The position numbers and the translations under genes were made by a program. The notes under the pieces are model-generated. The model did no database searches. It saw only the letters and a list, made by a program, of their open reading frames with translations, and had not been told where the DNA came from. Below, one piece after another: positions 28,323-57,248 of a stretch of DNA of 64,000 nt; the stretch's first letter is position 1; the number at the start of each line of letters is the position of its first letter. The DNA is taken from IMG/VR virus record IMGVR_UViG_3300042868_005134, positions 248,001-312,000 of that record; one strand, given 5' to 3'.

Positions 28323-28964
28323 TTAGGCTTTAATTACAGACTCTATCTTTGCTATTGACTCACCCATAAACATCCTGACCATGGTCAGTGTTTGATCGCC
28401 TTTGACGTAAAAGTAGCTGCCGCCCCAACTTGTGTTACGGGACAAACTGCGTTTAGCTGTTGGCGTCAGCTTTATCTTCTTGTTATTTTTACACCACTCT
28501 ACAAAATTTGTATGATTTTGTTTAGTTTTACCCAGGAAAATTTTGTAATCAAAGTCTAGTTTTTTTACAATTACTGTATTGTTTGCTAATTCGGGATTAG
28601 CTTTGTTTGGTACACTGATGTATTTTACACGATCCGGATCAATTGATGCTAATTTTTCTAAGTTAACAGATACGTTTGTATAGACATTAATTAATGGGTG
28701 TTCTATTCGCAATTCGTAATCGGACAGCTTGAACATAACATTGTGTAATGTTTTACAATACTCTAAATCCTTGGGTGTTTTGATCTTGAGCCAGACTGGG
28801 TATTGTTCGGGGTCCGCTAGTTCGCCAAATTTACTTGACACAAATGTCAAATCATTGCCTCTAAACCAATTGGCCACTGGACAAACAAGTACAATTTTGT
28901 ACTTGTACTTGTTCATAAAGAGCTTGGTAGTATCTTTAATCTTGACTGATTTTGGCAGTTTCAC
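28323..28964 (-). CDS. hypothetical phage protein
   Basis: ORF overlapping clpA end. Confidence 0.7.
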   Translation of the reverse strand: MKLPKSVKIKDTTKLFMNKYKYKIVLVCPVANWFRGNDLTFVSSKFGELADPEQYPVWLKIKTPKDLEYCKTLHNVMFKLSDYELRIEHPLINVYTNVSVNLEKLASIDPDRVKYISVPNKANPELANNTVIVKKLDFDYKIFLGKTKQNHTNFVEWCKNNKKIKLTPTAKRSLSRNTSWGGSYFYVKGDQTLTMVRMFMGESIAKIESVIKA

Positions 28965-40282: not shown

Positions 40283-40783
40283 TTATCTCAAAAATTCTCG
40301 CCAGTCCAAATCGTATTTGACACTGTCGATTTTGTGTACGCCTATCAAAAATAGCGCATAACTGGCCACGCTACTTCCTCTACCCACACCCCATAATACA
40401 TTTTTACCATGTAATGTATCTACTACATATTTAAGTACACGCAGAATATCTATCATGTTTCTTGATTGAAATTCTTGTAATTCTTCAATAAGGCGCGGGT
40501 AGTTTTGTTTAGGGCACAGATTTACTAGGAACCCTTCTATATCCATGTTTCGATATTCGCTGGGCATAAACCAATCAGTTTGGCACATTGCGTCAAATTG
40601 TGCTTGATCAACATCTAGTTGTTCAAACAATTTTAAGTTTAGTTCAGAATGTGTTTTCAGCTGTTGTGTACTGGCTGTTTTTTCTATCAGGATTTCTGAA
40701 AGGTAATCTACCTTATTAGAGTATATTAAATCAAATATATCTTTTTCTTGATAGATTACGTTGCCTAGTTGGTCATATTGCAT
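40283..40783 (-). CDS. mini protein homologous to a DNA polymerase III alpha (DnaE) fragment
   Basis: RLIEELQEF...WGVGRGSSVASYALFLIGVHKIDSVKYDLDWREFLR matches DnaE GxGRGS...GITxIDPxxYxLxFERFL. Confidence 0.75.
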   Translation of the reverse strand: MQYDQLGNVIYQEKDIFDLIYSNKVDYLSEILIEKTASTQQLKTHSELNLKLFEQLDVDQAQFDAMCQTDWFMPSEYRNMDIEGFLVNLCPKQNYPRLIEELQEFQSRNMIDILRVLKYVVDTLHGKNVLWGVGRGSSVASYALFLIGVHKIDSVKYDLDWREFLR

Positions 40784-41026: not shown

Positions 41027-43023
41027 GCAAAAATTACTCCATTATTACCAACACATACCCATTTATTACTAATGTATGTCATAGTACACCCTTGCCCAGC
41101 AGCACTAAATGTCATTGTACCTGCACCTCCCCACACGGGATTTGTAACAGTGATAACCATATTCCCGCCGGCCGCTATCATGGCAAATTGTATAGTTCTT
41201 CCATTGCCACTTGCTAGTAGTGTAGCAGTCTCTGCTCCAACTGTGGAGAAATAAATAATTTCAGCTCTTGGATCAACAACTCCGCCTCCCTCCAGATCCT
41301 GGGCGTCGAGTACATCTAATATATTTTGTATGATCCAATTCGTGCCGTCGCTTACCAATGTTATTGTAGAGAAGCTGGATGCACACGTTAAATTAGTTGC
41401 AACTCCGTCTATTAGTTTTCCATTCCTGTTTATAGTAATAAAATTAGTAGATGCGTTTCCGTTGTCAGCAAATGATACAAAATCTCCAGCAACAGTAGTA
41501 GACGGTAATGTGATAGTAAACGGACCACCACTACTATCACCAATTATACGTTGATTAGGCATCGCAGTGTAATTTTTTCTCACTAATACCTTTGTTTCTG
41601 AGCTGCCAATCGGAATCTGTGTTTCTCCGCCTAGCTTACTAGTATCAATCATTGTGCCAGTTTCATCGCCATATACATATAAGTTTGGTGTTTCAGTACT
41701 AACAACAATTTGAATATACGAACCTGGTAGACCGGCTGTGCCTACAACAGTAACACCTGTACTATATAAATTAACAGTTGCTGGTACTGCAGTATCCGGA
41801 GTTGTGGAAAATCTTAAAGGTCCTCCTGAATTACTACCGTCGCTCAAGTTAAATTTATATGTAAAACCTGGTACTAATTTTAATCCAGCACTAGTAATTT
41901 TATCGCCGTCTATAAAAAATATTTCTTGAATACCAGAACCATCGTCATCGATAGTAACAGCATATTCTTTAAAATTATTGCTGTCAATGGTTATAGTATT
42001 TGTGTCTGATCTAGTTATTGTTGTTCCATATCCACTAGCAAATTTAATACTGTCAGTACCACTGCCAGAGCCGCCAGCATCTAAATCTAAATTGGCGCCA
42101 CCAGTTATTGTGCTAGCTTTAATGCTGTATGTGGTGTCAGTGTTGACAGTTTGATTAATCCAAGTTGTGTCGAAGTCTGTGTTTGATATTTTAGACAATA
42201 CTTGTCCGGTTGTGCCTCCTGTGGCTACACCTGTGCCCGCGCCGCTAGTAATACTAGCAGTAAGGTCGCTACTGTTTACCCACTGACCTCCTATGTATTT
42301 TAACACTTGTCCTGAAGAAGGTGTAATAATAGATACATTACTTAAATTATTTAAACTTAAATTTATATTGCTGTTAACCCAAGATGTTCCGTTAAATGAT
42401 AATATTTGCCCTAATGTACTTCCAGATAACGTAACATCTAATAAATCATTAATAGTAGTAGGAGATACGCCATCGGCCGCTAATTCGACAACATAAACAT
42501 CAACGCCCGCATTTATAGTCCATACTTCAAATACTCTCGAAGCGGATAGGTCTGTCCCAGTGGCAATTGGATTAGTTAAACTTCCCATGAATCGTACAGC
42601 ACCGCCGCCGCTTGTGGCAAAGTTGAAGTAATAATTAGTGCCATTACTTCTAATAGAAACTTTTATTCTTCCATATAGTCCGTTACTCGGCCAATCTTGA
42701 AAAGTTAGTAAATGTGATCCTACTATTGTTATTTCGTGATACTCCCCGTCTGCTAAACTTACATTAGTAGACGACGTACTGGTAGTTGTGTACACACTGC
42801 CATATAATTGATTGGTTACTGCGTTAGAAATAACGTTTCCGTTAAAATCGTTATCGTCGTTGAGTTTGGCAGTGTTGGTCTGTAATTCAGTAATCTCGGC
42901 ATTGGCAGTGGCCAAGCCATCTCTAATAATACTAAAGTTATCTCTGAATCCCTGACTGTCGTTGTCTACTCCGGCTACAGGAAAATCTGCGTCGATGGTA
43001 GCTGATACTATTGCGCTGGTCAT
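41023..43023 (-). CDS. virion structural protein (baseplate/fibre-associated)
   Basis: FPVAGVDNDSQGFRDNF N-terminus; fibre-type LNDLLDV and GGTTGQVLSK modules. Confidence 0.7.
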   Translation of the reverse strand: MTSAIVSATIDADFPVAGVDNDSQGFRDNFSIIRDGLATANAEITELQTNTAKLNDDNDFNGNVISNAVTNQLYGSVYTTTSTSSTNVSLADGEYHEITIVGSHLLTFQDWPSNGLYGRIKVSIRSNGTNYYFNFATSGGGAVRFMGSLTNPIATGTDLSASRVFEVWTINAGVDVYVVELAADGVSPTTINDLLDVTLSGSTLGQILSFNGTSWVNSNINLSLNNLSNVSIITPSSGQVLKYIGGQWVNSSDLTASITSGAGTGVATGGTTGQVLSKISNTDFDTTWINQTVNTDTTYSIKASTITGGANLDLDAGGSGSGTDSIKFASGYGTTITRSDTNTITIDSNNFKEYAVTIDDDGSGIQEIFFIDGDKITSAGLKLVPGFTYKFNLSDGSNSGGPLRFSTTPDTAVPATVNLYSTGVTVVGTAGLPGSYIQIVVSTETPNLYVYGDETGTMIDTSKLGGETQIPIGSSETKVLVRKNYTAMPNQRIIGDSSGGPFTITLPSTTVAGDFVSFADNGNASTNFITINRNGKLIDGVATNLTCASSFSTITLVSDGTNWIIQNILDVLDAQDLEGGGVVDPRAEIIYFSTVGAETATLLASGNGRTIQFAMIAAGGNMVITVTNPVWGGAGTMTFSAAGQGCTMTYISNKWVCVGNNGVIFA

Positions 43024-46000
43024 GTTATTGTGGTCCTATCGTTTCTAAATACTAGATATTTATCTGTATATTCACCAGTAACAGAATCTATTGTGTATCT
43101 GTCTATGGTGTAATCTAAATTCTTAAAATCAAATGTTGTAGTTTTTATGTAATTTTCAATGTTTAGCAAAACAGTATCTGCGCCGCCCGGCTTACAATAG
43201 CACAAAGGAACGGCCGCTACGTAGTTGATTTCTGTAGTTTTGCCCAGTTGAATACTGCGCATCCATAATGGCAAATAGTTACGCTCGGTGGCAGTATTCT
43301 CCATATTTTGAATCCTGTAACGCCATAAGCTAATACTGCTAGGGAATCTAATGCCAGTACCCGGATCTCCGGCAAATACATCGTTCCTATCCAATGTTAC
43401 ATTGAATGGAATTGGACGATGCCAAAACGCAGTATCTTTATTAAAATCTGGACCAATATAAAATTCATTGTTTTGATCCACTGTGATGTCTATGTTACTT
43501 CTACTATATTTGATAGTTGAAGGCAAATGATCTTTTCCTTTTTCCAACGGATCTAACATTTCTACATAGATAATCTCATACACTATGGTATTTGTGCCTG
43601 GTATTTTTGCCACTGCCTTTTTAAGTTCGCCAAAGGTAAATCGTTTTGTCTTATGGTTTCGTCCCATGGCACTGATATATTCAACTGCCTGCTTGGTTTC
43701 AATTCCTGCGTACACTAACATTTTTAAATCAGTTTGTATGCCAAAATATGGATCGCTTGGTCGATATATTACCGACTGATCAAACACTTCGCCGTCAGTT
43801 ATAAAATCTCTAAATATTGATCTTTGATTCAATTTCAAGAATGGTTTTGCTGTTAAATTGCTGTAGTAGGTATTGTTAGGTGTGTTAACTGTCAACGTAA
43901 ATGTTCTAGTTATAGCACTGTAACCCAGTTGGTCTCTAGCCCTTATAGTAAATGTATAACTTCTATCTAGTGTAGTATCGTCTGAATCTAAACTTAGGTT
44001 AAGACTGCCAACACGGTCAAATGTGGTAAGTGTTTTGTCTCTTTCAGGAAATTTATACACACTCCATTTTGTGAGATCTGTACTGAACAATGCGCTGCTA
44101 GTGTGAGCCGTAATACATTTGTAAAATGTAGGTAAATTATACGTTGTTCCTGACGCTGGCTTCATTCCTATACTAGTACCCTTATTTGGATAGTTAAAAT
44201 AATTTAACGGAATGATCAATGTCTGTCCTGCGTAAACACCTGGTGAAGTTTCAATACTAATTAACCCACTACCAAATGTTCCAGGTGTAGCATAATAATT
44301 TAAGGTAATTGTACTTGAGTTAGAGATAGTGGCAAAATATCTGCCGTTATAATTGCTATTACTATTGCCGTTGATTCTATACCAAAATTCTAAACCTGTA
44401 GATGTGGTAAATGTTAAATCGTTGACAACATCAAGACCACCAAGGTGCGCACCGCTGACAGTTATCCGATCTCCTGGAAGATAGCCAAAACCTGGATCAA
44501 CTAAAATCACTGTGACTAGTCCAGTATAATTTGTACTGCCATTAGAGCCTTTTTCTATTTTGAATCGTGCACCAGTACCACTACCAGTTGTAGAAGCAGC
44601 AGGAACATCGTTATAAACAAACGGAACAATACTACTACTAGTTCCTTTTATTAAAGTAAAAACCGGAGCAAGTGGAGTTAATTTTTGTGTAGGAATTGTA
44701 AATGCTACTTTAACAGATTCACTCATGATAAATGTCAAATCGTTTGTGGGACTTGTGCCACCTAACAAATTACCTACTATTTTAATTTGATCGCCGGTAC
44801 TATATCCTGACCCAGGACTTATCATTTTGATGGTTGTTACACTATTATAACCTGTTAAACTACTACGTTTAATTACGGTAAATGTTGCACCTGCGCCACC
44901 ACCCGTAACTGCTACACTGGCAACACCTGTGTATGTTCCATCAATCGCTACACTCACTCCTGAAATATTAGTATATACATCGTCGGATGTTGTTAAAGTA
45001 GATCCAGTTAATTCAATAGCGGCAATAGTGACACTAACAGCATCATAATAGTTAAAGTTTAAATCGTCACTGACAATTTCCACTAAATCGCCAGTGACAA
45101 AATTGTGATCTAAACTGGTAACTACTGTTGCGGTATTACGACGTCTTGTTAATGATTTAATTCCGCGGATGTTATTTTGTTTAACAACAGTGTTTATTTG
45201 ATAGCTACTGCTTGGCTTCCATAAACTTCTATAGCGTATTTGATTGGTAAGTTGATTTACCTTACCTACCACTTCTCCGTCTAGATTTAAAGTTAAGCCA
45301 GGCGGCAGTTTGCCATCTTCTAGTGTATATAGAATGGCAGATCCACTAAAGGTACTACTGGCAACTATGCTAAGTGTGCTAACATACCCGCTGTCAATGT
45401 TTCCTAGATTTTCAGGACTGGTCCAGTTCATGACACTTTCCACTTCGCCCAAGATGTCCACAGTAAATACTCGACGACTTACTGCTTGTTCTGATCCTTG
45501 TCCAAATCTAATAGCCTTGATGGTAAATTGATATGTTAAAGTGATAGCAGGTTGGTATGGAACAGTGCCAAATACTTCACCGGTAGTTTGGTCAAATATC
45601 ATACCTGTTGGTAGAACGCTATCAGTACCTATGAACACAGAACTACCATTAGTTACCGTTACTTCTAGAGCAGGACTAACAGTCAAGCGATAGATATCCC
45701 CACCCAGCACATCAACATCTGTTATAGTATAAATTTCTTCTGTGGCACCTGTAAATTCCCCGTTGAATGAAAATTTATATCCCACTTGCGGTACTCCGTC
45801 AGCTCGTTCTATTCTAACAGCAGTCTGTCCTAGTCTATTGTCATTGGCTGTTTCTCTTATACAGATTGCGCTTATTAACGCATTGATGTCTGAGTAATCG
45901 TACGTTACAGGTCCTAGATCACTAAAGCCTTCGTATATATCTATTTTAAATGTTTGATAGTTATTGGCTCTTCGCAAACCGAGATACTGGGGTGTTGTGA

Positions 46001-46829
46001 ATATAGGAGCACGTACATAGGACACATCGGCAGTGTACGCACCGGTACCCGCAGCTTCAATGACATTGTCGCTTCTAAAGAAATCATCGCCTACTACAAA
46101 AATTCTAAATTTTCGTTTGGCCACACTGTCGCCATCTGTAACTGTTGCTATAAATTCGTAATTTCGATTTAGCTTGCGTGGTCTTCCGGTAGGTACACTA
46201 AAGTCAAACACAGTTAAATCAAATACGTAAGTGTCGTATCCGTTAGTACTTCTATAGCCAAAGTCGTAGGCTACATTGTCATACAAGTCTGTGTCGAAAG
46301 GACCGTTGCCAGCAGCTAACGGAATAGACAATAACGGTTGAACAAAGCCTGTAATTCTTCCGCTTTCTGTTAAAATTAAACCTGGTGGCAACTCTCCCTC
46401 GTCGCTGGCAATAAAGAATTTAAGTTGCTGGCCAGCGGCCGTATCGGTATCTGTGACAACTAATTGAAAATCGATATAACTACTATCTAAAATATAATAT
46501 GCATCGTTGGCACCGATGGGCAATGCACCAGCAGGAGTTAACCAATTGGGTTCATCGGACCCAACTACTGTAATTGTAAAAGTTCTATCCGCAAATTCAC
46601 TACTGCTACTTGCTCTAATAACAAATTTAAATTCTGTTGTTCTAGGTATTTCGTAAGGTGTTCCTACCAAGTTGCTGCCTTGAATACGCATACCCGGCGG
46701 AATCTTTCCTGTTATTTTTTGAAAAGTTATGCCAACACTAGAGCTTATAGGCAGTGCTATACTTACTGTTTGTCTTTCATTGATTGTCCCTAAACTGTAT
46801 CCAGAAGGTTGAGTCCACGTTAATGCCAT
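43020..46829 (-). CDS. large baseplate wedge-like protein with Ig-like repeats
   Basis: repeated LPPGLxLxxxGxIxG Ig-type motifs; late promoter; structural context. Confidence 0.65.
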   Translation of the reverse strand: MALTWTQPSGYSLGTINERQTVSIALPISSSVGITFQKITGKIPPGMRIQGSNLVGTPYEIPRTTEFKFVIRASSSSEFADRTFTITVVGSDEPNWLTPAGALPIGANDAYYILDSSYIDFQLVVTDTDTAAGQQLKFFIASDEGELPPGLILTESGRITGFVQPLLSIPLAAGNGPFDTDLYDNVAYDFGYRSTNGYDTYVFDLTVFDFSVPTGRPRKLNRNYEFIATVTDGDSVAKRKFRIFVVGDDFFRSDNVIEAAGTGAYTADVSYVRAPIFTTPQYLGLRRANNYQTFKIDIYEGFSDLGPVTYDYSDINALISAICIRETANDNRLGQTAVRIERADGVPQVGYKFSFNGEFTGATEEIYTITDVDVLGGDIYRLTVSPALEVTVTNGSSVFIGTDSVLPTGMIFDQTTGEVFGTVPYQPAITLTYQFTIKAIRFGQGSEQAVSRRVFTVDILGEVESVMNWTSPENLGNIDSGYVSTLSIVASSTFSGSAILYTLEDGKLPPGLTLNLDGEVVGKVNQLTNQIRYRSLWKPSSSYQINTVVKQNNIRGIKSLTRRRNTATVVTSLDHNFVTGDLVEIVSDDLNFNYYDAVSVTIAAIELTGSTLTTSDDVYTNISGVSVAIDGTYTGVASVAVTGGGAGATFTVIKRSSLTGYNSVTTIKMISPGSGYSTGDQIKIVGNLLGGTSPTNDLTFIMSESVKVAFTIPTQKLTPLAPVFTLIKGTSSSIVPFVYNDVPAASTTGSGTGARFKIEKGSNGSTNYTGLVTVILVDPGFGYLPGDRITVSGAHLGGLDVVNDLTFTTSTGLEFWYRINGNSNSNYNGRYFATISNSSTITLNYYATPGTFGSGLISIETSPGVYAGQTLIIPLNYFNYPNKGTSIGMKPASGTTYNLPTFYKCITAHTSSALFSTDLTKWSVYKFPERDKTLTTFDRVGSLNLSLDSDDTTLDRSYTFTIRARDQLGYSAITRTFTLTVNTPNNTYYSNLTAKPFLKLNQRSIFRDFITDGEVFDQSVIYRPSDPYFGIQTDLKMLVYAGIETKQAVEYISAMGRNHKTKRFTFGELKKAVAKIPGTNTIVYEIIYVEMLDPLEKGKDHLPSTIKYSRSNIDITVDQNNEFYIGPDFNKDTAFWHRPIPFNVTLDRNDVFAGDPGTGIRFPSSISLWRYRIQNMENTATERNYLPLWMRSIQLGKTTEINYVAAVPLCYCKPGGADTVLLNIENYIKTTTFDFKNLDYTIDRYTIDSVTGEYTDKYLVFRNDRTTIT

Positions 46830-46873: not shown

Positions 46874-49498
46874 TTAACCAAATCTAAAAATTCTAGGTCT
46901 GGGCCAGGCCATACCGGAGGATGGTCGTACACCTTGCGATAGTTTAGGCACTGTTTGCCCTTCTGTAGGACGTTCTTTTTTATAATATAAGTATAGATTA
47001 GGTGCTCCTTGAAGATCCCTAATATCAGTTGGGCCGCCAGTGGTTGCGCTTACCTGTCCTTGTTTTGCGACGCCTGTAATATAGGCCTTTGCTTGAACTT
47101 GATTCCAATGCGGGTTTTGTTCTAAAACACAAGCCAGCACCCCACACACATTAGGGCTTGCCATACTGGTTCCACTAATTTTACCCAGTAGGTATGAGCC
47201 ATTTCTGCTATCGCCTATACCACTTAGATACGCACTGATAATATTAGTACCTGGTGCCCAAATGTCCACACCAGGGCCACAATCACTATAATAACTCTTT
47301 TGGTCACTGCTGTTTACATCTATTGCTCCCACACATATATTTGGGATAGCAGTATCGTTGGCAGTGGGGCTGGTGCCGCGCATATAGTAATAGGGATTAG
47401 CAACACTGGCTGGATATCTACTGGCCATTTCAAATGTGTTGTCCCAATCTAAACCACCTGGTACATCATGTTTCCATAATCCGTTGCCAGCTGCCCCTAC
47501 CATGATAACACCTTCTGCTATAGCATCTACTATGTCGGCATCACATCCTGGTACACGAGAAGGAATACGTTGCCCCGATATAAATCCCCAACCGTTCAAT
47601 TGTTCTGTGGTAAATCCACCACCCACAGTTTTTCTAGCATTGGCACCCAACTGAAGATCAATTTGACTGGGTGTTGCTTCGTAAAAAACAAATTCGTTAA
47701 CCATGTTTGGACTACCAACAGTGCCACCAGTTGAAGCTGTACCTTCAAGTCTTACTCTGTATGTTCTATTGGGCGAAGTACCTTCGACACCGTAATAAAT
47801 TCTTTGTACACTATTGTCGGCACACGACCACATAATCTTTGGAAGATTTGGACTTGCTGGACCAAGGCCAGCATATAAAGTTGAGCCACTGCCGAATGTA
47901 ACATAATGATTAGTGCTAACATAGATAGTGCTATATGTGTTACCTAAAAATGTAATACTGAACGGCAACACCAACGTCCAGTAGCCATCATCATTATTTC
48001 CGCTAGTTGGTGTAGTACTGCTGGCTAAAGAAGCTGCATCTAATAAGCTATTAGTTATTTCTGTAACAGTTGCCGCAGAACCAGTTGACGTAGTGTTTAC
48101 CAACAAACTCATGGCAACGGCAATAGTGGGAGTTTCTGCGTTAGCTAGATCTAGTGTTGTATCAAATATAATGGTATATACGTCAGTTTCCGCTAAACTA
48201 AAATCTTCTCTAATATCAGTTTCTACTGCTATGTCAGTGAACGGACCTTGGGTGAAGGTATCAACTACACTGTTATCAGATTTTTTAATAGTAATGCTGC
48301 TTGTTAAACTAACTGTGCCACTAAAACATTCAGAAGCAACATTGTTTATTAAACTGATATCTGCAGGTCCTTGAACTGTAACAGAATAGCTGGAATCGGG
48401 CTCACTAAACGTAGTTAAGTAAGTTTGCTGTCCTTCTTGCGACCAACTAACAGGTTTAGTTAAAATGCTGCCTCCAGGGGGCGTATACGGGCCTGTAGTT
48501 GTAATTCTATTTCCAAAATTTTCAAATCCCAATAACACAGCCAATCTTTCATTAGAGTTACAAACGCCGCTATATCCAGTATAGGTAGTAGCACCACTTG
48601 GCGTATATCTTGATCCCCTGTAGGTAACTGCTGTAATATCAGTCATACTCCATTCGCTGGGGAAAATACTTTCTCCCCAACTGTTGTTACATATAGTTGG
48701 ATTACGTCTTCCAGTTGCTGGATTTACGCTTTTAGCTTTGTGAAATTCTTTTATGTAACCGAATACGTAACTAAAGTCTCCGCTATCACCTGCATCATAA
48801 TAAATGTTATAGATGTTGGAGTCTCTTGCCCATCCTTGAGTATTACCAGCAACTGTGCCGCTTACGTGTACACTATGACTGTGCGTGGCATTACTGTATG
48901 TTCCAGGAGCTGTTCCTCTCACAGCAAGATTGTGTTGAAACCAATTGTAGTTCAACATTCGTGAGCCGCCAGTACCGTTGGCGTTAACAGCATATTCTGG
49001 ATGTGCGCTATCTGGATTACCAGCGTCTACAATAACTACATCTACATTTTTTCCTGTTGATGTTATTTGTACTGTGGCTGTTTGGTTGGCAGTCCCGTCA
49101 CTGCCCCAGCCTGATCTATTAGCGCCTTCTGTACAGCGTAACAGTGCCCAATTCAACATGTTACTAGATGTAGTTCCTGATTTATTCCAAAAACTACTAG
49201 TCTGTGTTGTGGTGGCAAATGTGCCAGGCTTCATGCCTAGATATCTAGAATGTATTGACACACTTTCAACTCTAAAATCTTGTTTTAGGTCTAATGCTTC
49301 CCATTCGGTTAGCATATAGTGTGTGCTTCTGCTAAACGGTTTTTGATCTACGCAAGAAACTGCACGCTCAGGCGCTGCACTTCCTTCGAATCTACCATAG
49401 TCTGCCATCTCGGCATAAAATGAATCAAGATCATCGCTACTTTTCAAAGTAACAATATACTCTTTTGTTTCTGTATATTTTTTAATAGAGTCTGTCAT
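46874..49498 (-). CDS. subtilisin-like S8 serine protease with large internal insert
   Basis: VDVVIVD (Asp), HSVHVSGT (His), NNSWG, AAGN, GTSMASP (Ser); I9-like prodomain. Confidence 0.88.
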   Translation of the reverse strand: MTDSIKKYTETKEYIVTLKSSDDLDSFYAEMADYGRFEGSAAPERAVSCVDQKPFSRSTHYMLTEWEALDLKQDFRVESVSIHSRYLGMKPGTFATTTQTSSFWNKSGTTSSNMLNWALLRCTEGANRSGWGSDGTANQTATVQITSTGKNVDVVIVDAGNPDSAHPEYAVNANGTGGSRMLNYNWFQHNLAVRGTAPGTYSNATHSHSVHVSGTVAGNTQGWARDSNIYNIYYDAGDSGDFSYVFGYIKEFHKAKSVNPATGRRNPTICNNSWGESIFPSEWSMTDITAVTYRGSRYTPSGATTYTGYSGVCNSNERLAVLLGFENFGNRITTTGPYTPPGGSILTKPVSWSQEGQQTYLTTFSEPDSSYSVTVQGPADISLINNVASECFSGTVSLTSSITIKKSDNSVVDTFTQGPFTDIAVETDIREDFSLAETDVYTIIFDTTLDLANAETPTIAVAMSLLVNTTSTGSAATVTEITNSLLDAASLASSTTPTSGNNDDGYWTLVLPFSITFLGNTYSTIYVSTNHYVTFGSGSTLYAGLGPASPNLPKIMWSCADNSVQRIYYGVEGTSPNRTYRVRLEGTASTGGTVGSPNMVNEFVFYEATPSQIDLQLGANARKTVGGGFTTEQLNGWGFISGQRIPSRVPGCDADIVDAIAEGVIMVGAAGNGLWKHDVPGGLDWDNTFEMASRYPASVANPYYYMRGTSPTANDTAIPNICVGAIDVNSSDQKSYYSDCGPGVDIWAPGTNIISAYLSGIGDSRNGSYLLGKISGTSMASPNVCGVLACVLEQNPHWNQVQAKAYITGVAKQGQVSATTGGPTDIRDLQGAPNLYLYYKKERPTEGQTVPKLSQGVRPSSGMAWPRPRIFRFG

Positions 49499-49503
49499 GG
49501 CGT

Positions 49504-51798
49504 TTAAGATTTGTAAATTTTAATTCTCGGAAACACCATGCCACTAGCAGGTCTGGGTTTACAATTAATTTTAGGAAATGTATTACCTGATGTAGCACGT
49601 TCCACCTTATGAAAAAGTATTCGATTGTTTCCGCCTTGTAAACTATTAGAATCTGTGAACCCGCCACCACTGTCTGCCATCTTTCCACTTTGAGCATAAC
49701 CTGTAATATAATTTTTAGCATCTGCTTGGTTCATTCGAGGATATGTTTCTAATGCCACCGCTAGCACTCCAGCAACTTGCGCCGCGGCCATGCTAGTACC
49801 ATTATACTTTTGATAATTGTCTCCACCCTCAACTACAATTCCTGCAGTATTTCCGCCGCTTCCTCCGGTGCCATCGTATACACTACTGATAACATTTTTT
49901 CCGGCAGCATATAAATCTACTCGAGGTCCAGTATTACTTGCTTGTGTTTTATTTTCGTTGCTGGTACTATCCAATGCTCCCACTATAATTATATCAGTAC
50001 TGGCCGCGTTAGGACTAGAACCTCTATGATAGTAAATGGCTTCTCCGTTGTCTAAATAATAATTATTGTAATCTAGACCAGACGGTGTATCTAATTTAAA
50101 ACTGCCATTACCTGCCGAACCTACAAAAACTATACCATCGTTTATACAGTCAACCACATCAGCATCCATGCTGGCATCTCTATAAGGTGCAGCATCGCCA
50201 CCTTGCATAATACCATATTGTTCTAATTGCGCCGGTGAAAACTCTCCACGGAACGCAGCATTTTGATCCACGTGTACATCAATTTGATTAGGTGTTGCTT
50301 CGTAAAATGTCATTTCCCACAACATGGTAGGACTGCCTAATACTCCTCCATTTGCTCCATCGTGTCCTTCGAATCTGATTACGAATGTTCTGCTTCCACT
50401 GGTACCCTTGGTGCCGTACCATAGTCGTTGGCAGCTTCTATCTCCACCACTAATGATTATTTTTCTTGTAGTGGGCCTATTTGCACCTGGGTCAACTTTG
50501 TAGCAATCAGACGCTGGGTTGCCGCCAAAAGTAACAAAACTATTAGAACTCACATGAACATTTTGACTACTGCCAGTTTGGCTTGGCCCATAGTTATTAG
50601 TACCACTATTACTAAAATATGTAATATCGAAAGGCAACGGCAATGCCCAATAGGCATCGTCATAGATATCCACACCATTCGCATCACTGCCAGTGGGCAC
50701 ACCTGCGTTGGTTAGTCCACTAGTTCCTTGCATATTTTTAGTTATGCTGACAACACTAGCGGCAGTAGCGCTAGTGTTAGTTATTCTGTTGCCGCCATTG
50801 GATAAATTAGCCAGTGTTGATGCTCTGGCAGAGGCAGTACATACTCCGCTGTAACCTGTATCTAAAGGGGTATTTCCTAAACCGTCAGGTGTTACAAACG
50901 AACCCCTGTAATAAATTTTACTAATAATTGAATCATTACCGCCGGTGAACGTATTACGCACAGTTGGACTAATGCCAAGGCCCCAGCTGTTGTTAACTAT
51001 GGTTGGGTTACGTCTTCCAGTTGTTGTATTTACACTTTTAGCATTATGGAATGCTCTTATATAATCAAATATATAATCTGAAGGCGTGTACAATCCTGGA
51101 TCTAAATTTCCTTGATCGTGCCTAAAATTGTATATGTCAGCATCTCTAGCCCAACCTTGTGTATCACCACCTATAATACCTGCAACGTGTGTTGCGTGAT
51201 TGTTTGTTCCTGCGTATCCGTCACCGGGTACAGTTTCGTAATAGTTGTAGGTAGCATCAGGATTTGCACTCCATACACTTAAATTATGATTGGCAAACCA
51301 ATCATACTGTTGTGCTCGGCCGACAAACTCGCCGTGACTGGGATCGATAATCTGATCCACTACAACAACATCTACGTTTTTTCCTGTACCTGATGTCACA
51401 GCGGTAGCAGTTTCGTCGCCTTGTGATCCTTCTGAACCCCAGCCAACAATATTGTTGGCAATAGTGGATCTGTACAATCCCCAATTTCGATTGCCTATAG
51501 CGATAGTTTCACTTCTACTCCAAGTGGCAGTTTGACTTGAATGTAGTACAGCCTTGGCGCCCATTAACTTCGACTTTAAGGTCACTGCTTCAACTCTTGG
51601 ATCATTGCGTAGTTGATCAGCTTCGTCTACTGACAAACGATAATGTGTATTTCTACTAATGGGTCGTCGATTCACACACTCCGCTATTCTTGAAGGGACA
51701 TTGTTGGTAGTCCCTTCAGTTTCCATCTCAGAATAAAATTGTTCTAGGTCATCTTTATTTCTGAGCGTTACAATAAACTCTCTGAAAATTGCTGGCAT
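49504..51798 (-). CDS. subtilisin-like S8 serine protease (paralogue) with internal insert
   Basis: VDVVVVD, HATHVAGI, NNSWG, SAGN, GTSMAAA. Confidence 0.88.
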   Translation of the reverse strand: MPAIFREFIVTLRNKDDLEQFYSEMETEGTTNNVPSRIAECVNRRPISRNTHYRLSVDEADQLRNDPRVEAVTLKSKLMGAKAVLHSSQTATWSRSETIAIGNRNWGLYRSTIANNIVGWGSEGSQGDETATAVTSGTGKNVDVVVVDQIIDPSHGEFVGRAQQYDWFANHNLSVWSANPDATYNYYETVPGDGYAGTNNHATHVAGIIGGDTQGWARDADIYNFRHDQGNLDPGLYTPSDYIFDYIRAFHNAKSVNTTTGRRNPTIVNNSWGLGISPTVRNTFTGGNDSIISKIYYRGSFVTPDGLGNTPLDTGYSGVCTASARASTLANLSNGGNRITNTSATAASVVSITKNMQGTSGLTNAGVPTGSDANGVDIYDDAYWALPLPFDITYFSNSGTNNYGPSQTGSSQNVHVSSNSFVTFGGNPASDCYKVDPGANRPTTRKIIISGGDRSCQRLWYGTKGTSGSRTFVIRFEGHDGANGGVLGSPTMLWEMTFYEATPNQIDVHVDQNAAFRGEFSPAQLEQYGIMQGGDAAPYRDASMDADVVDCINDGIVFVGSAGNGSFKLDTPSGLDYNNYYLDNGEAIYYHRGSSPNAASTDIIIVGALDSTSNENKTQASNTGPRVDLYAAGKNVISSVYDGTGGSGGNTAGIVVEGGDNYQKYNGTSMAAAQVAGVLAVALETYPRMNQADAKNYITGYAQSGKMADSGGGFTDSNSLQGGNNRILFHKVERATSGNTFPKINCKPRPASGMVFPRIKIYKS

Positions 51799-51799
51799 A

Positions 51800-54700
51800 T
51801 CATGCTTCTAGTTGTAGTACAGTTAATGTAACTGTGATAGTTCTAGTAGTTCCACTCTTATTTGTTACAGCAATTGGAATACTAGCTAGTGGAGTTCCTT
51901 CGTTGTTAAAGCCTATTGTTCCAGGGCTAATTAACACTGTTTGGGCTGCACTAGTAGTAATAACTTCGGCAATAACTCCACTACCTGGTGTTGGATCAAC
52001 ACCTTCAGCTCTACTAGAATCAGCACTTCTACTGGCTGTATCGGTATAAATTCTCACCCATGCTGGTTGATCTACTAATATTTTAAGTAGAGCATAAGAT
52101 TTATGTCCTGTGACGGCAACGTTGCCAGTGGCTGCATCAGCTAGAGAAGCAGTTGTTCCAATTACATCGGCGCGAGTGGCCATGCTGCCACCTCCGCCAC
52201 TGCTGGCAATGGTAATAGTGTTAGCGTCTGTGCGTGTTACTGTGACATTGGTACCTGCAGCTATGGTTAAGTTGTCTGTACTGGTATCTGAACCTGTGAG
52301 TCTTATGTTTGCACCACCTGATACTGTTTCAGCGCTGATGCCATAAGTCACGCCACCGCCTGATACTGTGCCTGGTTCCCAATTGCTGCGCACACTGTTC
52401 CATACCAATGCCTGACCGTTAGACGGAGCGGCCGTAGAAGTGTCAACATCACTCAGTGCGTTGATACTAGTGGCTGAATATGCTGCTGGCACATCGCTGG
52501 CATTGGCTAATGCGTTCCATGTGGTGCTATGTGCAAAATACATTTTGCCATCTGCGTGACTGTGCGCAATAGCACCGTGATAGGTAGTAGCATTAGGGAA
52601 GGCTGTTTGATCAGCATAGTAAAATGGTATCACTGATCCTACACCTGGTGCTGTGATTGCTCCAGTATCACTCACTGTGACCAAACTGGTCTGACTTAAT
52701 TTTCCAGTTGTTCCATCAAATCTCACTAGAGCATTGTCTGTGGCACTGGCTGGACCCACCATGTCACCGGCCGATGCTGTGCCTGGCAACCATTTGCTAC
52801 CAGCAGAATTCCAAACAAGTGTCTGACCATTTGTGGGCGCACTGGTAGTTGTGTCAACGTCGCTTAGAGCATCGATACTGGTCGAAGCGTAGGCTGCAGG
52901 TATACTAGGAGTTCCGCTAAGGTCGCTGTATGCTCCTGTAGTTGCCACTGTTGACAATGTAGGAGTTCCGCTAAGATCAGCGTATGCGCCACTAGTAGCC
53001 ACAGTTGACACTGTAGTCCACTCTGTATTATAATCGGTGCCATCTATTTTCGATAATACTTGACCAACTGTTCCGCCTGTAGGTACACCTTGGCCGTTAG
53101 TACCTGCCGGTCCTTGGAACACTCCAAGATCAACCCATGCAGAACCACTATAGCTCCATAAGTGAGTTGGGCTTGGACTTAATACAACATACGCATCACC
53201 TAACGTCATTCCTGTTAACGCTAGTAGTGCAGTATTATCTGCAACTGTTCCTTTAATTACAATACTGCCAATTGGTGCGCCGTTCACTGTAGAACCGCCA
53301 GGCAAGTTAATTGTTGTTCCCACCGCAGTAATTAATCCGCCGCCACTACCACCACTACTACCAATTCTTAAACCATTACTAGTTCCATCAATTGCGACTG
53401 TATTAAAAAATCGAGCTGTACGATCTGAATTTAATCGTAATACTTCTTGCATTGTACCAGATGAACTAGCTACTTGTAATTTTAATACACCGGGGATTAT
53501 TCCTGTAGAAATGGTTCCTGTAGCTTCCGCTTTAATTTGCGCAATTCTTACATCGAAATTATATGCGGTAACAGTGCCGGCTCCTGCTTCGGAAGTAATA
53601 TCAGGGCCAGGTGAAGTAACAGTAAAGCTAGTAGAACTAGGTACAGTTAATGTTGTAATGTTAATTAAGTTAACACTTGAGTTAGTTGTGCATACAATAG
53701 TAACAGCCCAACTAGTTGGTCCTAGACTACTAGTCGTCATGCCATGTGACCCGCTAGTGGTAACAGTTAGTATACCAGCTGTTCTGGAAATATTAGTGAT
53801 AGTTGATGTTGGAGCATATCCGTCAAATCCTGACCATCTGATAGAATATATATTATCTCCAGTTAACATAGGAGTTGGTGTTCCATCAACTGAACTAATT
53901 CTTTGTAATACTAATCCTGGAAGAGTAGATGCACTTGGACTATACGATCTAAGAGTTAAAACTGGTGTGCCGCCTGCGACTGGAGCACCGTTATCTGTAA
54001 CAATTAACGAACTTCTACCTTGCCCAGGCGCACCACCAATACTAATACTTGATCCTGACAATCTAATGCTTGGCCCAACTAAATCGAGTTGCGAAGAAGC
54101 TGATACAGTAATACCGTTAGTATTTGGGGTAACACTACCTTTACCCACACCTAACACTTTATAATTGACACGACCTTCTACATATAGTGAGCTACCAGCA
54201 GCATCGTATGTTAAGAATCCGTTAGAACCCTTAACCGTAGTTCCTGGAATTTCGTAAAATGCTAAATCTAGCCCAAGACCTGATTGAACACGGCCGCTGG
54301 TGGAATTTATAGTAATAGTCCCGGCATCAGTTCTTTCAACAGAAATATCAGTGCCACTAGCCAACTTAACATCGTCTGTGCTAGAATTACTTCCTGTTAA
54401 GCGTAAGTTGGCGCCGCCAGTTGCTGTTTCTGAACTTATAGCATAAGTTGTATCAACAACATCATTTGTAATTAAGATAGTACTAGCGTCTGTTCGAGAT
54501 ACGGTAATACCAGTTCCGCTGTCAATTTTAACATCGTCTGTCACCATGTCACTGCCAGTTAAACGTAAGTTGGCGCCGCCAGTTGCTGTTTCTGCACCTA
54601 CACTATATGTTGTGCCTCCACCACCTGCATCAGCTGCCGGCGCCCATGCTGAACCGTTCCATTTTAGAACTTGTCCTGAGCTTGGAGTGTCGCTTGTTAC

Positions 54701-54895
54701 ATCCGCTAGATCTGCTAGGTTAACGGGAATAGTTCCCACAGCATAGCTTAAACTAGTCCACGGAGTAGTGCCGTTACCAATTTTAAATCTACCGGTATTT
54801 GTTTCAAATCCTGGTTCGCCTGCTGCTAAGACAACAGTACCTGATGCTGTCCACTCTAAAGCAGTTCCTTTTCTCAATATAATTTGTTGGGGCAT
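51800..54895 (-). CDS. tail fibre protein with Mtd_N-like N-terminal domain
   Basis: IILRKGTALEW...GEPGFETNTGRFKIGNGTTPWTSL; internal repeats; short GPAG collagen-like stretch. Confidence 0.75.
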   Translation of the reverse strand: MPQQIILRKGTALEWTASGTVVLAAGEPGFETNTGRFKIGNGTTPWTSLSYAVGTIPVNLADLADVTSDTPSSGQVLKWNGSAWAPAADAGGGGTTYSVGAETATGGANLRLTGSDMVTDDVKIDSGTGITVSRTDASTILITNDVVDTTYAISSETATGGANLRLTGSNSSTDDVKLASGTDISVERTDAGTITINSTSGRVQSGLGLDLAFYEIPGTTVKGSNGFLTYDAAGSSLYVEGRVNYKVLGVGKGSVTPNTNGITVSASSQLDLVGPSIRLSGSSISIGGAPGQGRSSLIVTDNGAPVAGGTPVLTLRSYSPSASTLPGLVLQRISSVDGTPTPMLTGDNIYSIRWSGFDGYAPTSTITNISRTAGILTVTTSGSHGMTTSSLGPTSWAVTIVCTTNSSVNLINITTLTVPSSTSFTVTSPGPDITSEAGAGTVTAYNFDVRIAQIKAEATGTISTGIIPGVLKLQVASSSGTMQEVLRLNSDRTARFFNTVAIDGTSNGLRIGSSGGSGGGLITAVGTTINLPGGSTVNGAPIGSIVIKGTVADNTALLALTGMTLGDAYVVLSPSPTHLWSYSGSAWVDLGVFQGPAGTNGQGVPTGGTVGQVLSKIDGTDYNTEWTTVSTVATSGAYADLSGTPTLSTVATTGAYSDLSGTPSIPAAYASTSIDALSDVDTTTSAPTNGQTLVWNSAGSKWLPGTASAGDMVGPASATDNALVRFDGTTGKLSQTSLVTVSDTGAITAPGVGSVIPFYYADQTAFPNATTYHGAIAHSHADGKMYFAHSTTWNALANASDVPAAYSATSINALSDVDTSTAAPSNGQALVWNSVRSNWEPGTVSGGGVTYGISAETVSGGANIRLTGSDTSTDNLTIAAGTNVTVTRTDANTITIASSGGGGSMATRADVIGTTASLADAATGNVAVTGHKSYALLKILVDQPAWVRIYTDTASRSADSSRAEGVDPTPGSGVIAEVITTSAAQTVLISPGTIGFNNEGTPLASIPIAVTNKSGTTRTITVTLTVLQLEA

Positions 54896-54935: not shown

Positions 54936-55511
54936 TTATGGCGTGCCGCCATCGATAACCACAGTGAAAGTGGAACCTGGACCACCACCATCCAATACTA
55001 CATCAAATACTGTGGAACTTGGGCCGCCACCATCAATTATGCTGGTTGAGCTGTCTGTAATGCCGACGCTTACCGTGACAGCTGGAGTAATGCTGTTTAA
55101 GGTTACTGTGAATGTTTCCGCGCCTTCTGTGGTAAAATCATTGGCTACAGCAATCACCAGCGAGGCAGTATTAGAGTTAACAGTAAATGACCCTGTTAAA
55201 ATAGCCAATCCTAAATCTGCTGCAGTAATCCCTGTTCCTGTAATGGTATATGGCACACTGGTACCATTATTTACATTAGTTGTAGTCAGTGTAATAGTTA
55301 CACTCGCGCCTTCGCTCACTGTGGCGCTACTTCTAGTTAGAGCATATGTAGGGGTAGTAGGAGCAGTGCCTCCAGATAATAAATTGCCGCCAGCTGTTAC
55401 ACCGTCGCCTACATAGATTAACTTTGTATCGGTAACATAGATAAGCTCACCTTCTTCTGGTGTAAAACTTAATCTATCTGTTTCAAGACCTCGTCTTAAT
55501 AATAATGACAT
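54936..55511 (-). CDS. fibre-associated protein (Mtd_N-like plus Calx-beta/Ig-like)
   Basis: LLLRRG...GELIYVTDTKLIYVGDG; EGAETFTVTL. Confidence 0.7.
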   Translation of the reverse strand: MSLLLRRGLETDRLSFTPEEGELIYVTDTKLIYVGDGVTAGGNLLSGGTAPTTPTYALTRSSATVSEGASVTITLTTTNVNNGTSVPYTITGTGITAADLGLAILTGSFTVNSNTASLVIAVANDFTTEGAETFTVTLNSITPAVTVSVGITDSSTSIIDGGGPSSTVFDVVLDGGGPGSTFTVVIDGGTP

Positions 55512-56535: not shown

Positions 56536-56542
56536 TATTTAG
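56536..56542 (-). promoter_or_regulatory. putative late promoter CTAAATA overlapping desaturase stop
   Basis: 18 nt before ATG 56517. Confidence 0.55.
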
Positions 56543-57246
56543 CTGGTTCGCACTTTTGCTAAACCTAGACAACTTAATATACGTATATAAAACCATCCTA
56601 TGTCAAATTCATACCATTTCTGACTAAATTTGGGATTTGCTATATCTGCATGGTGATTGTTATGTAGTTCTTCGCCGCCAATCCATATGCCCCATGGCAT
56701 TAAATTTGTACTTTTATCGTTAGTGTTAGTATTGCGATAACCCCACCAGTGCGCCATTCCGTTGATAAATCCAGCAGCCCAAAATGGAATCCACAACATT
56801 TGTACACCCCACACTAGAAATCCCCATGGCCCAAATAATACGAGATCTACGATCAACATTAAGAGAATGCCAAGGCGATGGTGGGGTGTATAAAGTTTAC
56901 GTTCGATCCAGTCTTTGGGTGTGCCCATTCCGTATTTCATAACCATGGCCGCATCACTGCCTGCACGATTGTAATACTTGACTCCGCCAAATACTAGATT
57001 CCAAATGCCGTATACGTGTGGGCTATGCGGATCACCTTCAACGTCAGTGTTCTGATGATGCTTGCGATGTACTGCTACCCACTGCTTGGTAGTCATGCCT
57101 GTAGTCAGCCACAACCAAAAACGCATGGCATGTGCCAACACAGGATGGAACTCAACACCTCTATGACTTTGACTACGATGTAGGTACAACGTGACACTCA
57201 CTATAGTCAAGTGCGTCATTAAAAGTGTGATTAAGATTATCTCCAT
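56539..57246 (-). CDS. membrane fatty-acid desaturase (delta-9 type)
   Basis: His boxes HRSQSH, HRKHH, HNNHH; TM segments; start trimmed to MEIIL. Confidence 0.92.
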   Translation of the reverse strand: MEIILITLLMTHLTIVSVTLYLHRSQSHRGVEFHPVLAHAMRFWLWLTTGMTTKQWVAVHRKHHQNTDVEGDPHSPHVYGIWNLVFGGVKYYNRAGSDAAMVMKYGMGTPKDWIERKLYTPHHRLGILLMLIVDLVLFGPWGFLVWGVQMLWIPFWAAGFINGMAHWWGYRNTNTNDKSTNLMPWGIWIGGEELHNNHHADIANPKFSQKWYEFDIGWFYIRILSCLGLAKVRTS

Positions 57247-57248
57247 TA

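What the first reader, a model, noticed from the sequence alone, without database searches (positions are those of the whole stretch)
46874..51798. Twin subtilases in the tail module with swappable inserts in the substrate-binding loop
Seen: two tandem paralogues with prodomain and full Asp/His/Ser triad. Each has a several-hundred-residue insert between NNSWG and the oxyanion A/SAGN, containing a nidogen(NIDO)-like DDxYWxLxLPFxITF...VSxNxxVTFG segment. The 874-aa copy has an extra sub-domain. They lie between fibre and baseplate genes. Established: this loop lines the subtilisin S1/S4 sites. Inference: virion-borne proteases with an adhesin-like targeting domain, for cutting S-layer or biofilm protein or maturing fibres.
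Basis: partly seen in the sequence, partly recalled or inferred. Interest (0 to 1): 0.6.

Follow-up and report, generated by a model that had tools for sequence, protein, structure and literature searches.

The report
Twin phage subtilases with nested binding domains
A 383-kb T4-like phage from lake water carries, inside its tail-fibre gene cluster, two neighbouring subtilisin-type protease genes with intact catalytic residues, each interrupted beside the substrate groove by a nidogen-like beta-sandwich domain (one also by a TNF/C1q-like domain); they are most likely enzymes carried on the virus particle, but this has not been tested for this phage.

Summary
ORFs 49504-51798(-) (764 aa) and 46874-49498(-) (874 aa) are tandem paralogues (about 40% identity). 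Both are Pfam Peptidase_S8, split in two, with Asp/His/Asn/Ser intact. Neither has a signal peptide.

An AlphaFold model (pLDDT 87) shows an I9-like propeptide and a proteinase-K-like core. An all-beta insert sits right after the NNSWG substrate-binding strand.

The insert core is a divergent NIDO-superfamily domain. Pfam's NIDO model does not hit it directly. A profile of the domain does reach a Pfam-positive NIDO protein (E 3e-6; hhalign 97%), and fold and language-model neighbours carry PF06119.

The extra piece in the 874-aa copy is a TNF/C1q-like jelly roll. It is the most variable region among orthologues.

More than 1,000 metagenomic relatives keep the triad. They gain and lose cassettes at three loops.

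T4-like cyanophages carry a version without the insert. One such homologue is annotated as a mass-spectrometry-detected virion protein.

Virion carriage, activity and substrate are all inferred for this phage. I rate it a new variant of a known kind, of moderate interest.

The parts
49504..51798 (-). P0002, a 764-aa subtilase (upstream twin). Catalytic residues D148, H201, N564, S669. No signal peptide.
51559..51798 (-). P0002 aa 1-80: I9-like propeptide (beta-alpha-beta-beta-alpha-beta), followed by a low-pLDDT linker at aa 80-86.
   Evidence: Model secondary structure. Foldseek alignments extend over pro-subtilisin, ProN-Tk-SP and CspB. No Pfam I9 hit.
50170..50979 (-). P0002 aa 274-543: all-beta insert between NNSWG and the helix that precedes SAGN.
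50257..50886 (-). P0002 aa 305-514: NIDO-like domain, cleanly absent from the cyanophage Sf-FR1 homologue.
49507..49596 (-). P0002 aa 735-764: conserved 30-residue C-terminal tail, disordered in the monomer model. Invariant R734, G738, P742, R749, P750, G753, P757, R758. Candidate docking peptide (inference).
46874..49498 (-). P0001, an 874-aa subtilase (downstream twin). Catalytic residues D158, H208, N672, S778.
47546..48673 (-). P0001 aa 276-651: composite insert, modelled alone at pLDDT 86.
48089..48439 (-). P0001 aa 354-470: extra TNF/C1q-like jelly-roll sub-domain nested in the insert (slot B). It is the most variable region among orthologues.
   Evidence: VIA-align Z 8-9.2 over model residues 79-195. 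Mean pairwise identity 56% against 70-78% elsewhere.
47624..48088 (-). P0001 aa 471-625: NIDO-like core.
51800..54895 (-). Upstream 1031-aa fibre-like protein (P0281). It has an Mtd_N N-terminus. Its C-terminal domain (aa 814-1015) is homologous to the C-terminus of Sf-FR1 gp191, the gene immediately upstream of the cyanophage subtilase, so this is a conserved neighbour.
43020..46829 (-). Downstream 1269-aa He_PIG (Ig-like) protein. The same neighbour follows the twin subtilases in the related contig L006.
41023..43023 (-). 666-aa protein with tail-fibre PHROG matches.

Best explanation
The two genes encode catalytically competent, proteinase-K-like subtilases made without a signal peptide in the infected cell.

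Proposed steps:
1. Each folds with an I9-like propeptide that is probably autocleaved (inferred from the family's known behaviour).
2. Each is then mounted on the tail-fibre/baseplate periphery of the virion, probably through the conserved 30-residue C-terminal tail (inferred).
3. Beta-sandwich binding modules grafted into surface loops hold a host cell-surface protein or glycoprotein against the active site. These modules are a NIDO-superfamily domain directly after the substrate-binding strand, plus a TNF/C1q-like jelly roll in the 874-aa copy.
4. The particle can thus cut through a proteinaceous layer (S-layer, sheath or pilus). This would be the protein counterpart of polysaccharide depolymerase tailspikes (inferred).
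5. Two paralogues with different modules would give two specificities.

Shown here: gene structure, the paralogy, the triad and its conservation, the fold, the insert position in the sequence, the kinship of the insert domains, the cassette variability, the conserved tail-fibre neighbourhood, and a virion annotation for a distant homologue.

Not shown: virion carriage in this phage, activity, and substrate.
For: - S8 membership and triad. D, H and S are invariant in 60 diverse relatives, and the oxyanion Asn is present in 57 of 60.
- High-confidence model with a proteinase-K-like core, TM by target 0.84-0.86.
- No N-terminal signal sequence.
- The insert starts right after NNSWG, equivalent to subtilisin 123-127. 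P0001 residues 646-673 align to the subtilisin segment PSGSAALK...AAAGNS.
- NIDO kinship: the profile hits a protein that passes Pfam NIDO at 30.2 bits against a cut-off of 25. That hit has E 3.2e-6 in 5.8 billion sequences, and hhalign gives 97% over 108 columns covering the NIDO match. Atlas fold and language-model neighbours carry PF06119, including bacterial S8+NIDO proteins.
- The same domain occurs in phage RCC1, Laminin_G_3 and giant repeat proteins.
- TNF/C1q-like sub-domain with matches to the PRD1 P5, PM2 P1, cyanopodophage needle and A-1(L) fibre domains. It is the fastest-evolving region.
- Cassette gain and loss at three loops: at least 6, 4 and 9 changes on a 63-row tree.
- Gene order Mtd_N fibre(s), twin S8, He_PIG protein is conserved in contig L006. 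The upstream partner domain is conserved next to the cyanophage Sf-FR1 subtilase.
That paper identified virion proteins by mass spectrometry of CsCl-purified particles (PMC9602691).
- Contigs covering 27 of 30 bins of both genes are present in a freshwater metatranscriptome.
Against: - There are no proteomic or structural data for this phage.
- The S-SCSM1 homologue is only about 31% identical. It lacks the insert and is fused to an 820-aa C-terminal extension, so the detected peptides may come from that part.
- The RNA-library contigs could be carried-over DNA.
- A complex prediction of P0002 with the upstream fibre's C-terminal domain gave no verdict.
- One sub-clade (P0020, P0024, P0032) has lost the oxyanion Asn. 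This hints that full catalytic power is not always needed.
- The host and its surface are unknown. The genome has no psbA.
- I found no characterised phage S8 surface-protein-cutting enzyme as a precedent in the paper library.
Confidence: 0.45

Rival explanations
1. Scaffold or adhesin reading. The proteins are virion receptor-binding components. Catalysis serves only to remove or clip their own propeptide. After that, the subtilase fold is a rigid platform that displays the NIDO-like, TNF-like and other cassettes. This would resemble PCSK9 or the CspC/CspA pseudoproteases, which act by binding.
For: - There are three loops with repeatedly exchanged cassettes.
- The TNF-like sub-domain is the most variable part.
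- The oxyanion Asn is lost in one sub-clade while D/H/S stay.
- PCSK9 and Csp structures are among the Foldseek matches.
- The CspB paper shows that a subtilase can keep its propeptide bound and has a stabilising inserted jelly roll (PMC3567191).
Against: - The triad is invariant in 60 of 60 relatives and the oxyanion Asn is kept in 57 of 60.
- The substrate-strand motif (S271, W272) is invariant.
- The insert sits next to the substrate groove rather than on a distal face, which fits substrate handling.
Confidence: 0.25
2. Morphogenetic protease reading. The twins process or chaperone the giant fibre proteins encoded around them during assembly. They are absent from the finished particle or present only in traces.
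For: - The genes are tightly packed in one operon-like unit with fibre genes.
- The neighbourhood with the Mtd_N fibre and the He_PIG giant protein is conserved.
- The proteins are made in the cytoplasm without a signal peptide.
Against: - A homologue is annotated as a virion protein.
- Binding-type cassettes that evolve fast fit an external, changing target better than a conserved viral substrate.
- T4-like fibre assembly is known to use chaperones, not S8 proteases (background knowledge).
Confidence: 0.15
3. Non-structural reading. The proteins are intracellular host-takeover or lysis-phase proteases that merely sit in the fibre cluster.
For: - There is no signal peptide.
- The genome also carries other proteases, for example a ClpA-like AAA+ protein at 28936-31200.
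Against: - Synteny with fibre genes is conserved across distant phages.
- The S-SCSM1 homologue is annotated as a virion protein.
- The inserted domains are extracellular or adhesin-type.
Confidence: 0.1

Closest known systems
Cyanophage 'subtilisin-like serine protease' / PHROG 9158 (Synechococcus phages Sf-FR1, S-CREM1, S-H38, S-WAM2, S-RSM4; S-SCSM1 ORF228)
   Same: These are true homologues at 31-48% identity over the propeptide, both catalytic halves and the C-terminal tail. They sit in the structural/fibre region and next to a homologous upstream partner domain.
   Different: The cyanophage proteins are about 550-570 aa and single-copy. They lack the roughly 210-aa NIDO-like domain: the Sf-FR1 alignment jumps from P0002 residue 304 to 515. 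S-SCSM1 instead has an 820-aa C-terminal extension. In the tree, Sf-FR1 nests with the P0001-type clade, so its insert-less state may be a secondary loss. The root is weak.
Proteinase K / aqualysin-type S8A subtilases
   Same: They share the catalytic fold (TM by target 0.84-0.86), the D-H-S order, the oxyanion Asn and an N-terminal propeptide.
   Different: The window proteins have no signal peptide. They carry a 270-376-aa insert after the Ser125-Gly127-equivalent strand and a conserved C-terminal tail. They are phage-encoded within a fibre cluster.
Clostridial Csp germination subtilases (CspB, CspC, CspA)
   Same: The subtilase domain is interrupted by a beta jelly-roll insertion, the propeptide matters for function, and paralogues work together (PMC3567191; PMC12880746 listed). 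They are among the Foldseek matches.
   Different: The Csp insert is about 130 aa and is not NIDO-like. Whether it sits at the same loop was not tested. Csp proteins are spore proteins and two of them are pseudoproteases, whereas here the triad is intact.
Bacterial S8 + NIDO proteins (Atlas cluster, mostly Myxococcota) and NIDO (PF06119) proteins in general
   Same: These combine a subtilase with a nidogen-like domain. They are fold neighbours of the insert (TM by query 0.37 and 0.58). Profile-level homology to a PF06119-positive protein was found.
   Different: Pfam's NIDO model does not detect the phage domain. I did not establish whether the bacterial proteins carry NIDO as an internal insert or as an appended domain. 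NIDO itself has no established function.
Virion-associated depolymerase tailspikes
   Same: The proposed logic matches: an enzyme on the fibre or baseplate with swappable specificity modules that clears a surface layer.
   Different: Known depolymerases act on polysaccharides with beta-helix folds. This would act on protein with an S8 fold. Function is untested.

Membership tests
Peptidase S8 (subtilase) | Pfam PF00082 match above the gathering score | tested here: met
   P0001 scores 77.5 bits and P0002 scores 86.2 bits against a cut-off of 21.8.
Peptidase S8 (subtilase) | Catalytic Asp, His and Ser in that order, plus the oxyanion-hole Asn | tested here: met
   P0001 has D158, H208, N672 and S778. 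P0002 has D148, H201, N564 and S669. D, H and S are invariant in 60 relatives.
Peptidase S8 (subtilase) | Alpha/beta subtilisin fold | tested here: met
   The AF2 model has pLDDT 87. Foldseek to proteinase K, aqualysin and keratinase gives TM by target 0.84-0.86 and E down to 7e-13.
Peptidase S8 (subtilase) | Proteolytic activity and autoprocessing | not testable with these tools
   This needs expression and an assay with a Ser-to-Ala control.
Inhibitor_I9-type propeptide | Sequence match to PF05922 | tested here: not met
   The N-terminal 285-300 aa give no hit at E <= 10.
Inhibitor_I9-type propeptide | Beta-alpha-beta-beta-alpha-beta domain ahead of the catalytic domain | tested here: met
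   Model elements E6-12, H15-25, E41-43, E50-55, H57-63 and E69-74, then a linker.
NIDO (PF06119) domain | Direct match to the Pfam model | tested here: not met
   The inserts alone give no hit at E <= 10. A six-frame search of the genome gives none. None of 45 close domain relatives has one.
NIDO (PF06119) domain | Profile-level homology to a protein that passes the Pfam NIDO threshold | tested here: met
   Profile A5 hits P0311 at E 3.2e-6. P0311 scores 30.2 bits for NIDO against a cut-off of 25, at residues 91-143. hhalign gives 97% probability and E 8.5e-11 over P0311 residues 68-184.
NIDO (PF06119) domain | Shared fold with NIDO-bearing proteins | tested here: inconclusive
   Atlas TM by query is 0.37-0.39 for the 376-aa model and 0.56-0.60 for the domain. 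Language-model scores are 0.82-0.83, which the tool rates as a lead only. No solved NIDO structure was matched.
TNF/C1q-like jelly roll (extra sub-domain of P0001) | Compact jelly-roll fold similar to TNF, C1q and phage receptor-binding heads | tested here: inconclusive
   Z is 8-9.2, rmsd about 3-3.8 A, with 100-116 residues aligned. The tool warns that Z near 8 can reflect a common arrangement.
TNF/C1q-like jelly roll (extra sub-domain of P0001) | Trimer formation | not tested
   No oligomer prediction was run.
PA-domain subtilases (plant SBT3, C5a peptidase type) | PA domain present, inserted after the oxyanion Asn | tested here: not met
   There is no PA Pfam hit. The insert here lies before the oxyanion Asn. 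The PA position is from background knowledge.
Virion-associated enzyme | Detected in purified particles | not testable with these tools
   The only support is indirect: the S-SCSM1 homologue is annotated as a virion protein from mass spectrometry.

The most novel reading that the evidence does not exclude
The twins could belong to an undescribed class of phage host-range determinants: virion-mounted 'protein depolymerases'. In this reading one conserved subtilase chassis has three loop slots around the active site. These slots take exchangeable binding cassettes (NIDO-like, TNF-like and others) that retarget the enzyme to different host surface proteins. The tandem pair would give one particle two specificities, or would work as a heterodimer.
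Probability: 0.3. Interest if true: 0.75.

Novelty: new variant of a known kind. Interest (0 to 1): 0.5.

Why it matters
Phage enzymes that clear polysaccharide capsules are well known and widely used. An equivalent that cuts surface proteins is not established.

This family is large: more than 1,000 metagenomic members, plus homologues in many cultured marine cyanophages. It keeps its catalytic residues, sits among fibre genes and shuffles binding cassettes. If it is a virion-borne protease, it would add a new way for phages to breach S-layers or sheaths and a new axis of host-range evolution. It would also offer a naturally modular protease scaffold.

The work also gives the function-less NIDO domain a microbial context that could be tested. 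The cultured cyanophage homologues make the virion question directly testable.

Tried and rejected
- Megablast of the locus against 50,697 phage records found no match. Only protein-level relatives exist.
- The Pfam NIDO model found nothing on the inserts or on the genome. There was no NIDO hit in 45 close domain relatives, and none in the first word-indexed profile search.
- The domain profile against PDB sequences gave only chance-level hits.
- Foldseek of the insert against PDB gave only generic beta-sandwich matches with low TM.
- Complex prediction of P0002 with the C-terminal domain of the upstream fibre (P0281 residues 800-1031) scored 0.21 against a mark of 0.32. That is no verdict, so it counts neither for nor against binding.
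- A psbA search to test for a cyanobacterial host found nothing.
- Pfam on long relatives (P0048, P0060, P0082, P0030) did not name the slot A or slot C cassettes.
- Paper searches for phage subtilase/virion and for NIDO/bacteriophage found no characterisation of this family.
- I rejected the idea that the whole insert is hypervariable. Its length is constant within each paralogue class (250-272 aa or 377-391 aa).
Full report
**What is there**

The window is bases 248001-312000 of a single 383,411-bp virus record that CheckV rates as complete. The finding's coordinates coincide with two complete minus-strand ORFs: P0002 (49504-51798, 764 aa) and P0001 (46874-49498, 874 aa). They are 5 nt apart, and P0002 begins 1 nt after the stop of the upstream 1031-aa gene.

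The two proteins align over their N-terminal 340 residues and C-terminal 430 residues at 39-41% identity (E 6e-67 and 5e-85). P0001 has an extra block at about residues 336-445. No further copy exists in the genome.

Both pass Pfam Peptidase_S8, as two separated stretches. Both match PHROG 9158 (unknown function) strongly. Catalytic residues are D158/H208/N672/S778 in P0001 and D148/H201/N564/S669 in P0002. Neither N-terminus looks like a signal peptide.

**Fold**

An AlphaFold2 model of P0002, built on 60 homologues, has mean pLDDT 87. It shows four parts:
- a beta-alpha-beta-beta-alpha-beta unit at residues 6-74, followed by a low-confidence linker; this is the topology of subtilase I9 propeptides, although Pfam I9 does not hit;
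- a catalytic core that superposes on proteinase K, aqualysin and a Meiothermus keratinase (TM by target 0.84-0.86);
- an all-beta region at about residues 285-540;
- a 30-residue C-terminal tail that is disordered in the model yet has eight invariant residues and exactly the same length in all 60 sequences.

**Where the insert sits**

NNSWG corresponds to the subtilisin Asn123-Gly127 segment, whose backbone forms one wall of the S1-S4 groove (established knowledge). P0001 residues 646-673 align to subtilisin PSGSAALK...AAAGNS. The Pfam alignment likewise breaks between model positions 119 and about 128-142. The insert therefore leaves the core immediately after the substrate-binding strand.

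I could not measure the three-dimensional placement, because model coordinates are not exposed.

**What the insert is**

The cyanophage Sf-FR1 homologue (570 aa) aligns to P0002 residues 1-304 and 515-760 as one contiguous protein. The acquired unit is therefore P0002 305-514 (about 210 aa), nested in a short family-specific excursion.

Pfam's NIDO model does not detect it, either on the excised inserts at E <= 10 or in a six-frame search of the genome. Three other lines link it to NIDO:
- A profile of the domain finds 3,720 proteins at E <= 1e-3. When that profile is widened with distant members, it reaches protein P0311 at E 3.2e-6 in a 5.8-billion-sequence database.
- P0311 passes Pfam NIDO (30.2 bits against a cut-off of 25, residues 91-143). 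hhalign of the phage-domain profile against it gives 97% probability and E 8.5e-11 over residues 68-184. The DD...LPF...Y...YV.TN motif and the downstream IYY..GT.PNR / FE..YE blocks line up.
- ESM-Atlas fold and language-model neighbours include clusters annotated PF06119, among them bacterial S8+NIDO proteins.

I conclude that the core is a divergent member of the NIDO superfamily.

The domain is a mobile module. It also occurs in phage RCC1-repeat, Laminin_G_3 and sialidase-N-like proteins, and up to ten times in giant proteins of 1,400-4,400 aa. In this genome only the two subtilases carry it.

**The extra sub-domain**

A separate model of P0001 276-651 (pLDDT 86) was searched exhaustively against PDB representatives. 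Residues 79-195 of that model (P0001 354-470) match TNF/C1q-type jelly rolls at Z 8-9.2. The matches include IBDV VP2, a cyanopodophage needle, PRD1 P5, PM2 P1, the cyanophage A-1(L) short-fibre binding domain and the Tk-SP jelly roll. Z near 8 is borderline by the tool's own guidance, so the fold class is likely but kinship is not shown.

Among 31 P0001-type orthologues this sub-domain is the least conserved region. Its mean pairwise identity is 56%, against 70-78% for the catalytic halves, the flank and the NIDO core.

**The family and the 'swappable' claim**

P0002 has more than 1,152 relatives at E <= 1e-5, ranging from 731 to 1,084 aa and almost all unnamed metagenomic proteins. In a 60-sequence alignment, D, H and S are invariant. 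The oxyanion Asn is present in 57 of 60; one sub-clade has Ala or Pro there.

The distance between NNSWG and A/SAGN falls into two tight classes, 250-272 aa and 377-391 aa. So the large insert is not freely exchanged.

Length variation is concentrated at three loops:

| Slot | Position (P0002 numbering) | Size classes (aa) |
|---|---|---|
| A | between the catalytic Asp and His | about 47, 120, 208 |
| B | inside the N-terminal part of the insert; holds the TNF-like unit | about 75, 164, 205, 260 |
| C | just before the catalytic Ser | about 45, 122, 205 |

On a maximum-likelihood tree built without those columns, the slot states need at least 6, 4 and 9 changes respectively. One member inside the P0001-type clade (P0094) lacks the slot B unit.

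**Context**

The transcription order on the minus strand is:
1. two large unannotated proteins
2. a fatty-acid-desaturase-like protein
3. a 329-aa protein
4. a 191-aa Mtd_N protein
5. the 1031-aa Mtd_N fibre-like protein
6. P0002
7. P0001
8. a 1269-aa He_PIG protein
9. a 666-aa tail-fibre-PHROG protein
10. replication genes

A related 84-kb contig keeps the same order: Mtd_N, Mtd_N, a 976-aa S8, an 885-aa S8, He_PIG and a DNA_pol3_alpha fragment. The twin arrangement is therefore ancestral to this group.

The C-terminal domain of the upstream fibre (residues 814-1015) is homologous to the C-terminus of the gene directly upstream of the Sf-FR1 subtilase. This is a conserved gene pair across distant phages.

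The genome has a T4-type major capsid protein, DNA polymerase and clamp loader, and no psbA. The locus is present in 23 lake-water DNA runs. Related contigs (90-99% alike) covering 27 of 30 bins of both genes occur in one freshwater metatranscriptome. That is compatible with expression but does not prove it.

**Virion association**

In Synechococcus phage S-SCSM1 the subtilase forms the N-terminal ~585 residues of ORF228. That ORF is annotated 'baseplate wedge subunit (virion protein)'. The paper states that virion proteins were identified by mass spectrometry of CsCl-purified particles (PMC9602691).

This is the only experimental support, and it is indirect. Identity is about 31%, the protein has no insert, and the peptides may come from the fused C-terminal extension. 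The fusion nevertheless suggests that the subtilase C-terminus is physically joined to structural parts. That fits the conserved C-terminal tail of the stand-alone proteins acting as a docking peptide (inference).

A complex prediction with the upstream fibre domain gave no verdict.

**Mechanism and rivals**

The best-supported reading (confidence about 0.45) is that these are zymogen-type subtilases assembled onto the fibre/baseplate periphery. Their grafted binding modules would present a host surface protein to the active site.

The main rival (0.25) is a PCSK9- or Csp-like scaffold in which catalysis serves only self-processing. This is favoured by the cassette display and by the loss of the oxyanion Asn in one sub-clade. 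It is disfavoured by the universal retention of the triad and of the substrate strand.

A morphogenetic protease role (0.15) and a non-structural role (0.1) are less consistent with the virion annotation and with the adhesin-type modules.

**Novelty**

The catalytic family is known, and cyanophage homologues are already annotated as subtilisin-like proteases. The following are not described in the literature I could search:
- the nested NIDO-superfamily insert beside the substrate groove;
- the TNF-like unit nested inside it;
- the three-slot cassette system;
- the conserved tandem pair.

I rate this a new variant of a known kind, interest about 0.5.

Noticed in passing
window 49507-49596 and 46877-46969 (-): Both subtilases end in a 30-residue tail with the same length in all 60 relatives and eight invariant residues (R, G, P, R, P, G, P, R pattern). 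It is disordered in the monomer model. It looks like a docking peptide for an unknown partner.
   Followed up: partly
relatives P0020, P0024, P0032 (alignment A1, column of P0002 N564): One sub-clade has Ala or Pro in place of the oxyanion-hole Asn while keeping Asp, His and Ser. These may be members with weakened catalysis.
   Followed up: partly
One lies between the catalytic Asp and His, the other just before the catalytic Ser. Pfam names none of these cassettes.
   Followed up: partly
window 56539-57279 (-): A fatty-acid-desaturase-family protein (Pfam FA_desaturase, E 7e-11) is encoded inside the fibre gene cluster.
   Followed up: no
window 40283-40783 (-); L006 17403-17906: A stand-alone 166-aa ORF matches only a fragment of the DNA polymerase III alpha NTPase domain (PHROG 11127). 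It is conserved at the same position in the related contig.
   Followed up: no
window 51800-54895 (-) and 54936-55511 (-): Two neighbouring proteins start with the Mtd_N domain of the Bordetella phage tropism determinant. I did not check whether a diversity-generating retroelement exists in the genome.
   Followed up: no
proteins P0123 (4359 aa) and P0124 (1437 aa), on contigs of 66-265 kb: The NIDO-like domain of the insert occurs up to ten times in tandem in giant unnamed metagenomic proteins. It also occurs fused to RCC1, Laminin_G_3 and LCCL domains.
   Followed up: partly
tree: The insert-less cyanophage Sf-FR1 protein groups with the P0001-type clade (SH-aLRT 100) rather than outside both paralogue groups. 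Its lack of the NIDO-like domain may be a secondary deletion. The rooting rests on one very long branch.
   Followed up: partly
window 28936-31200 (-): A 754-aa ClpA/ClpB-like AAA+ 'ATP-dependent protease' protein (PHROG 4871, E 3e-251) is encoded in the replication region.
   Followed up: no
window 46874-51798, run X24: A freshwater metatranscriptome holds contigs of a related strain (90-99% alike) over most of both genes. DNA carry-over was not excluded.
   Followed up: partly
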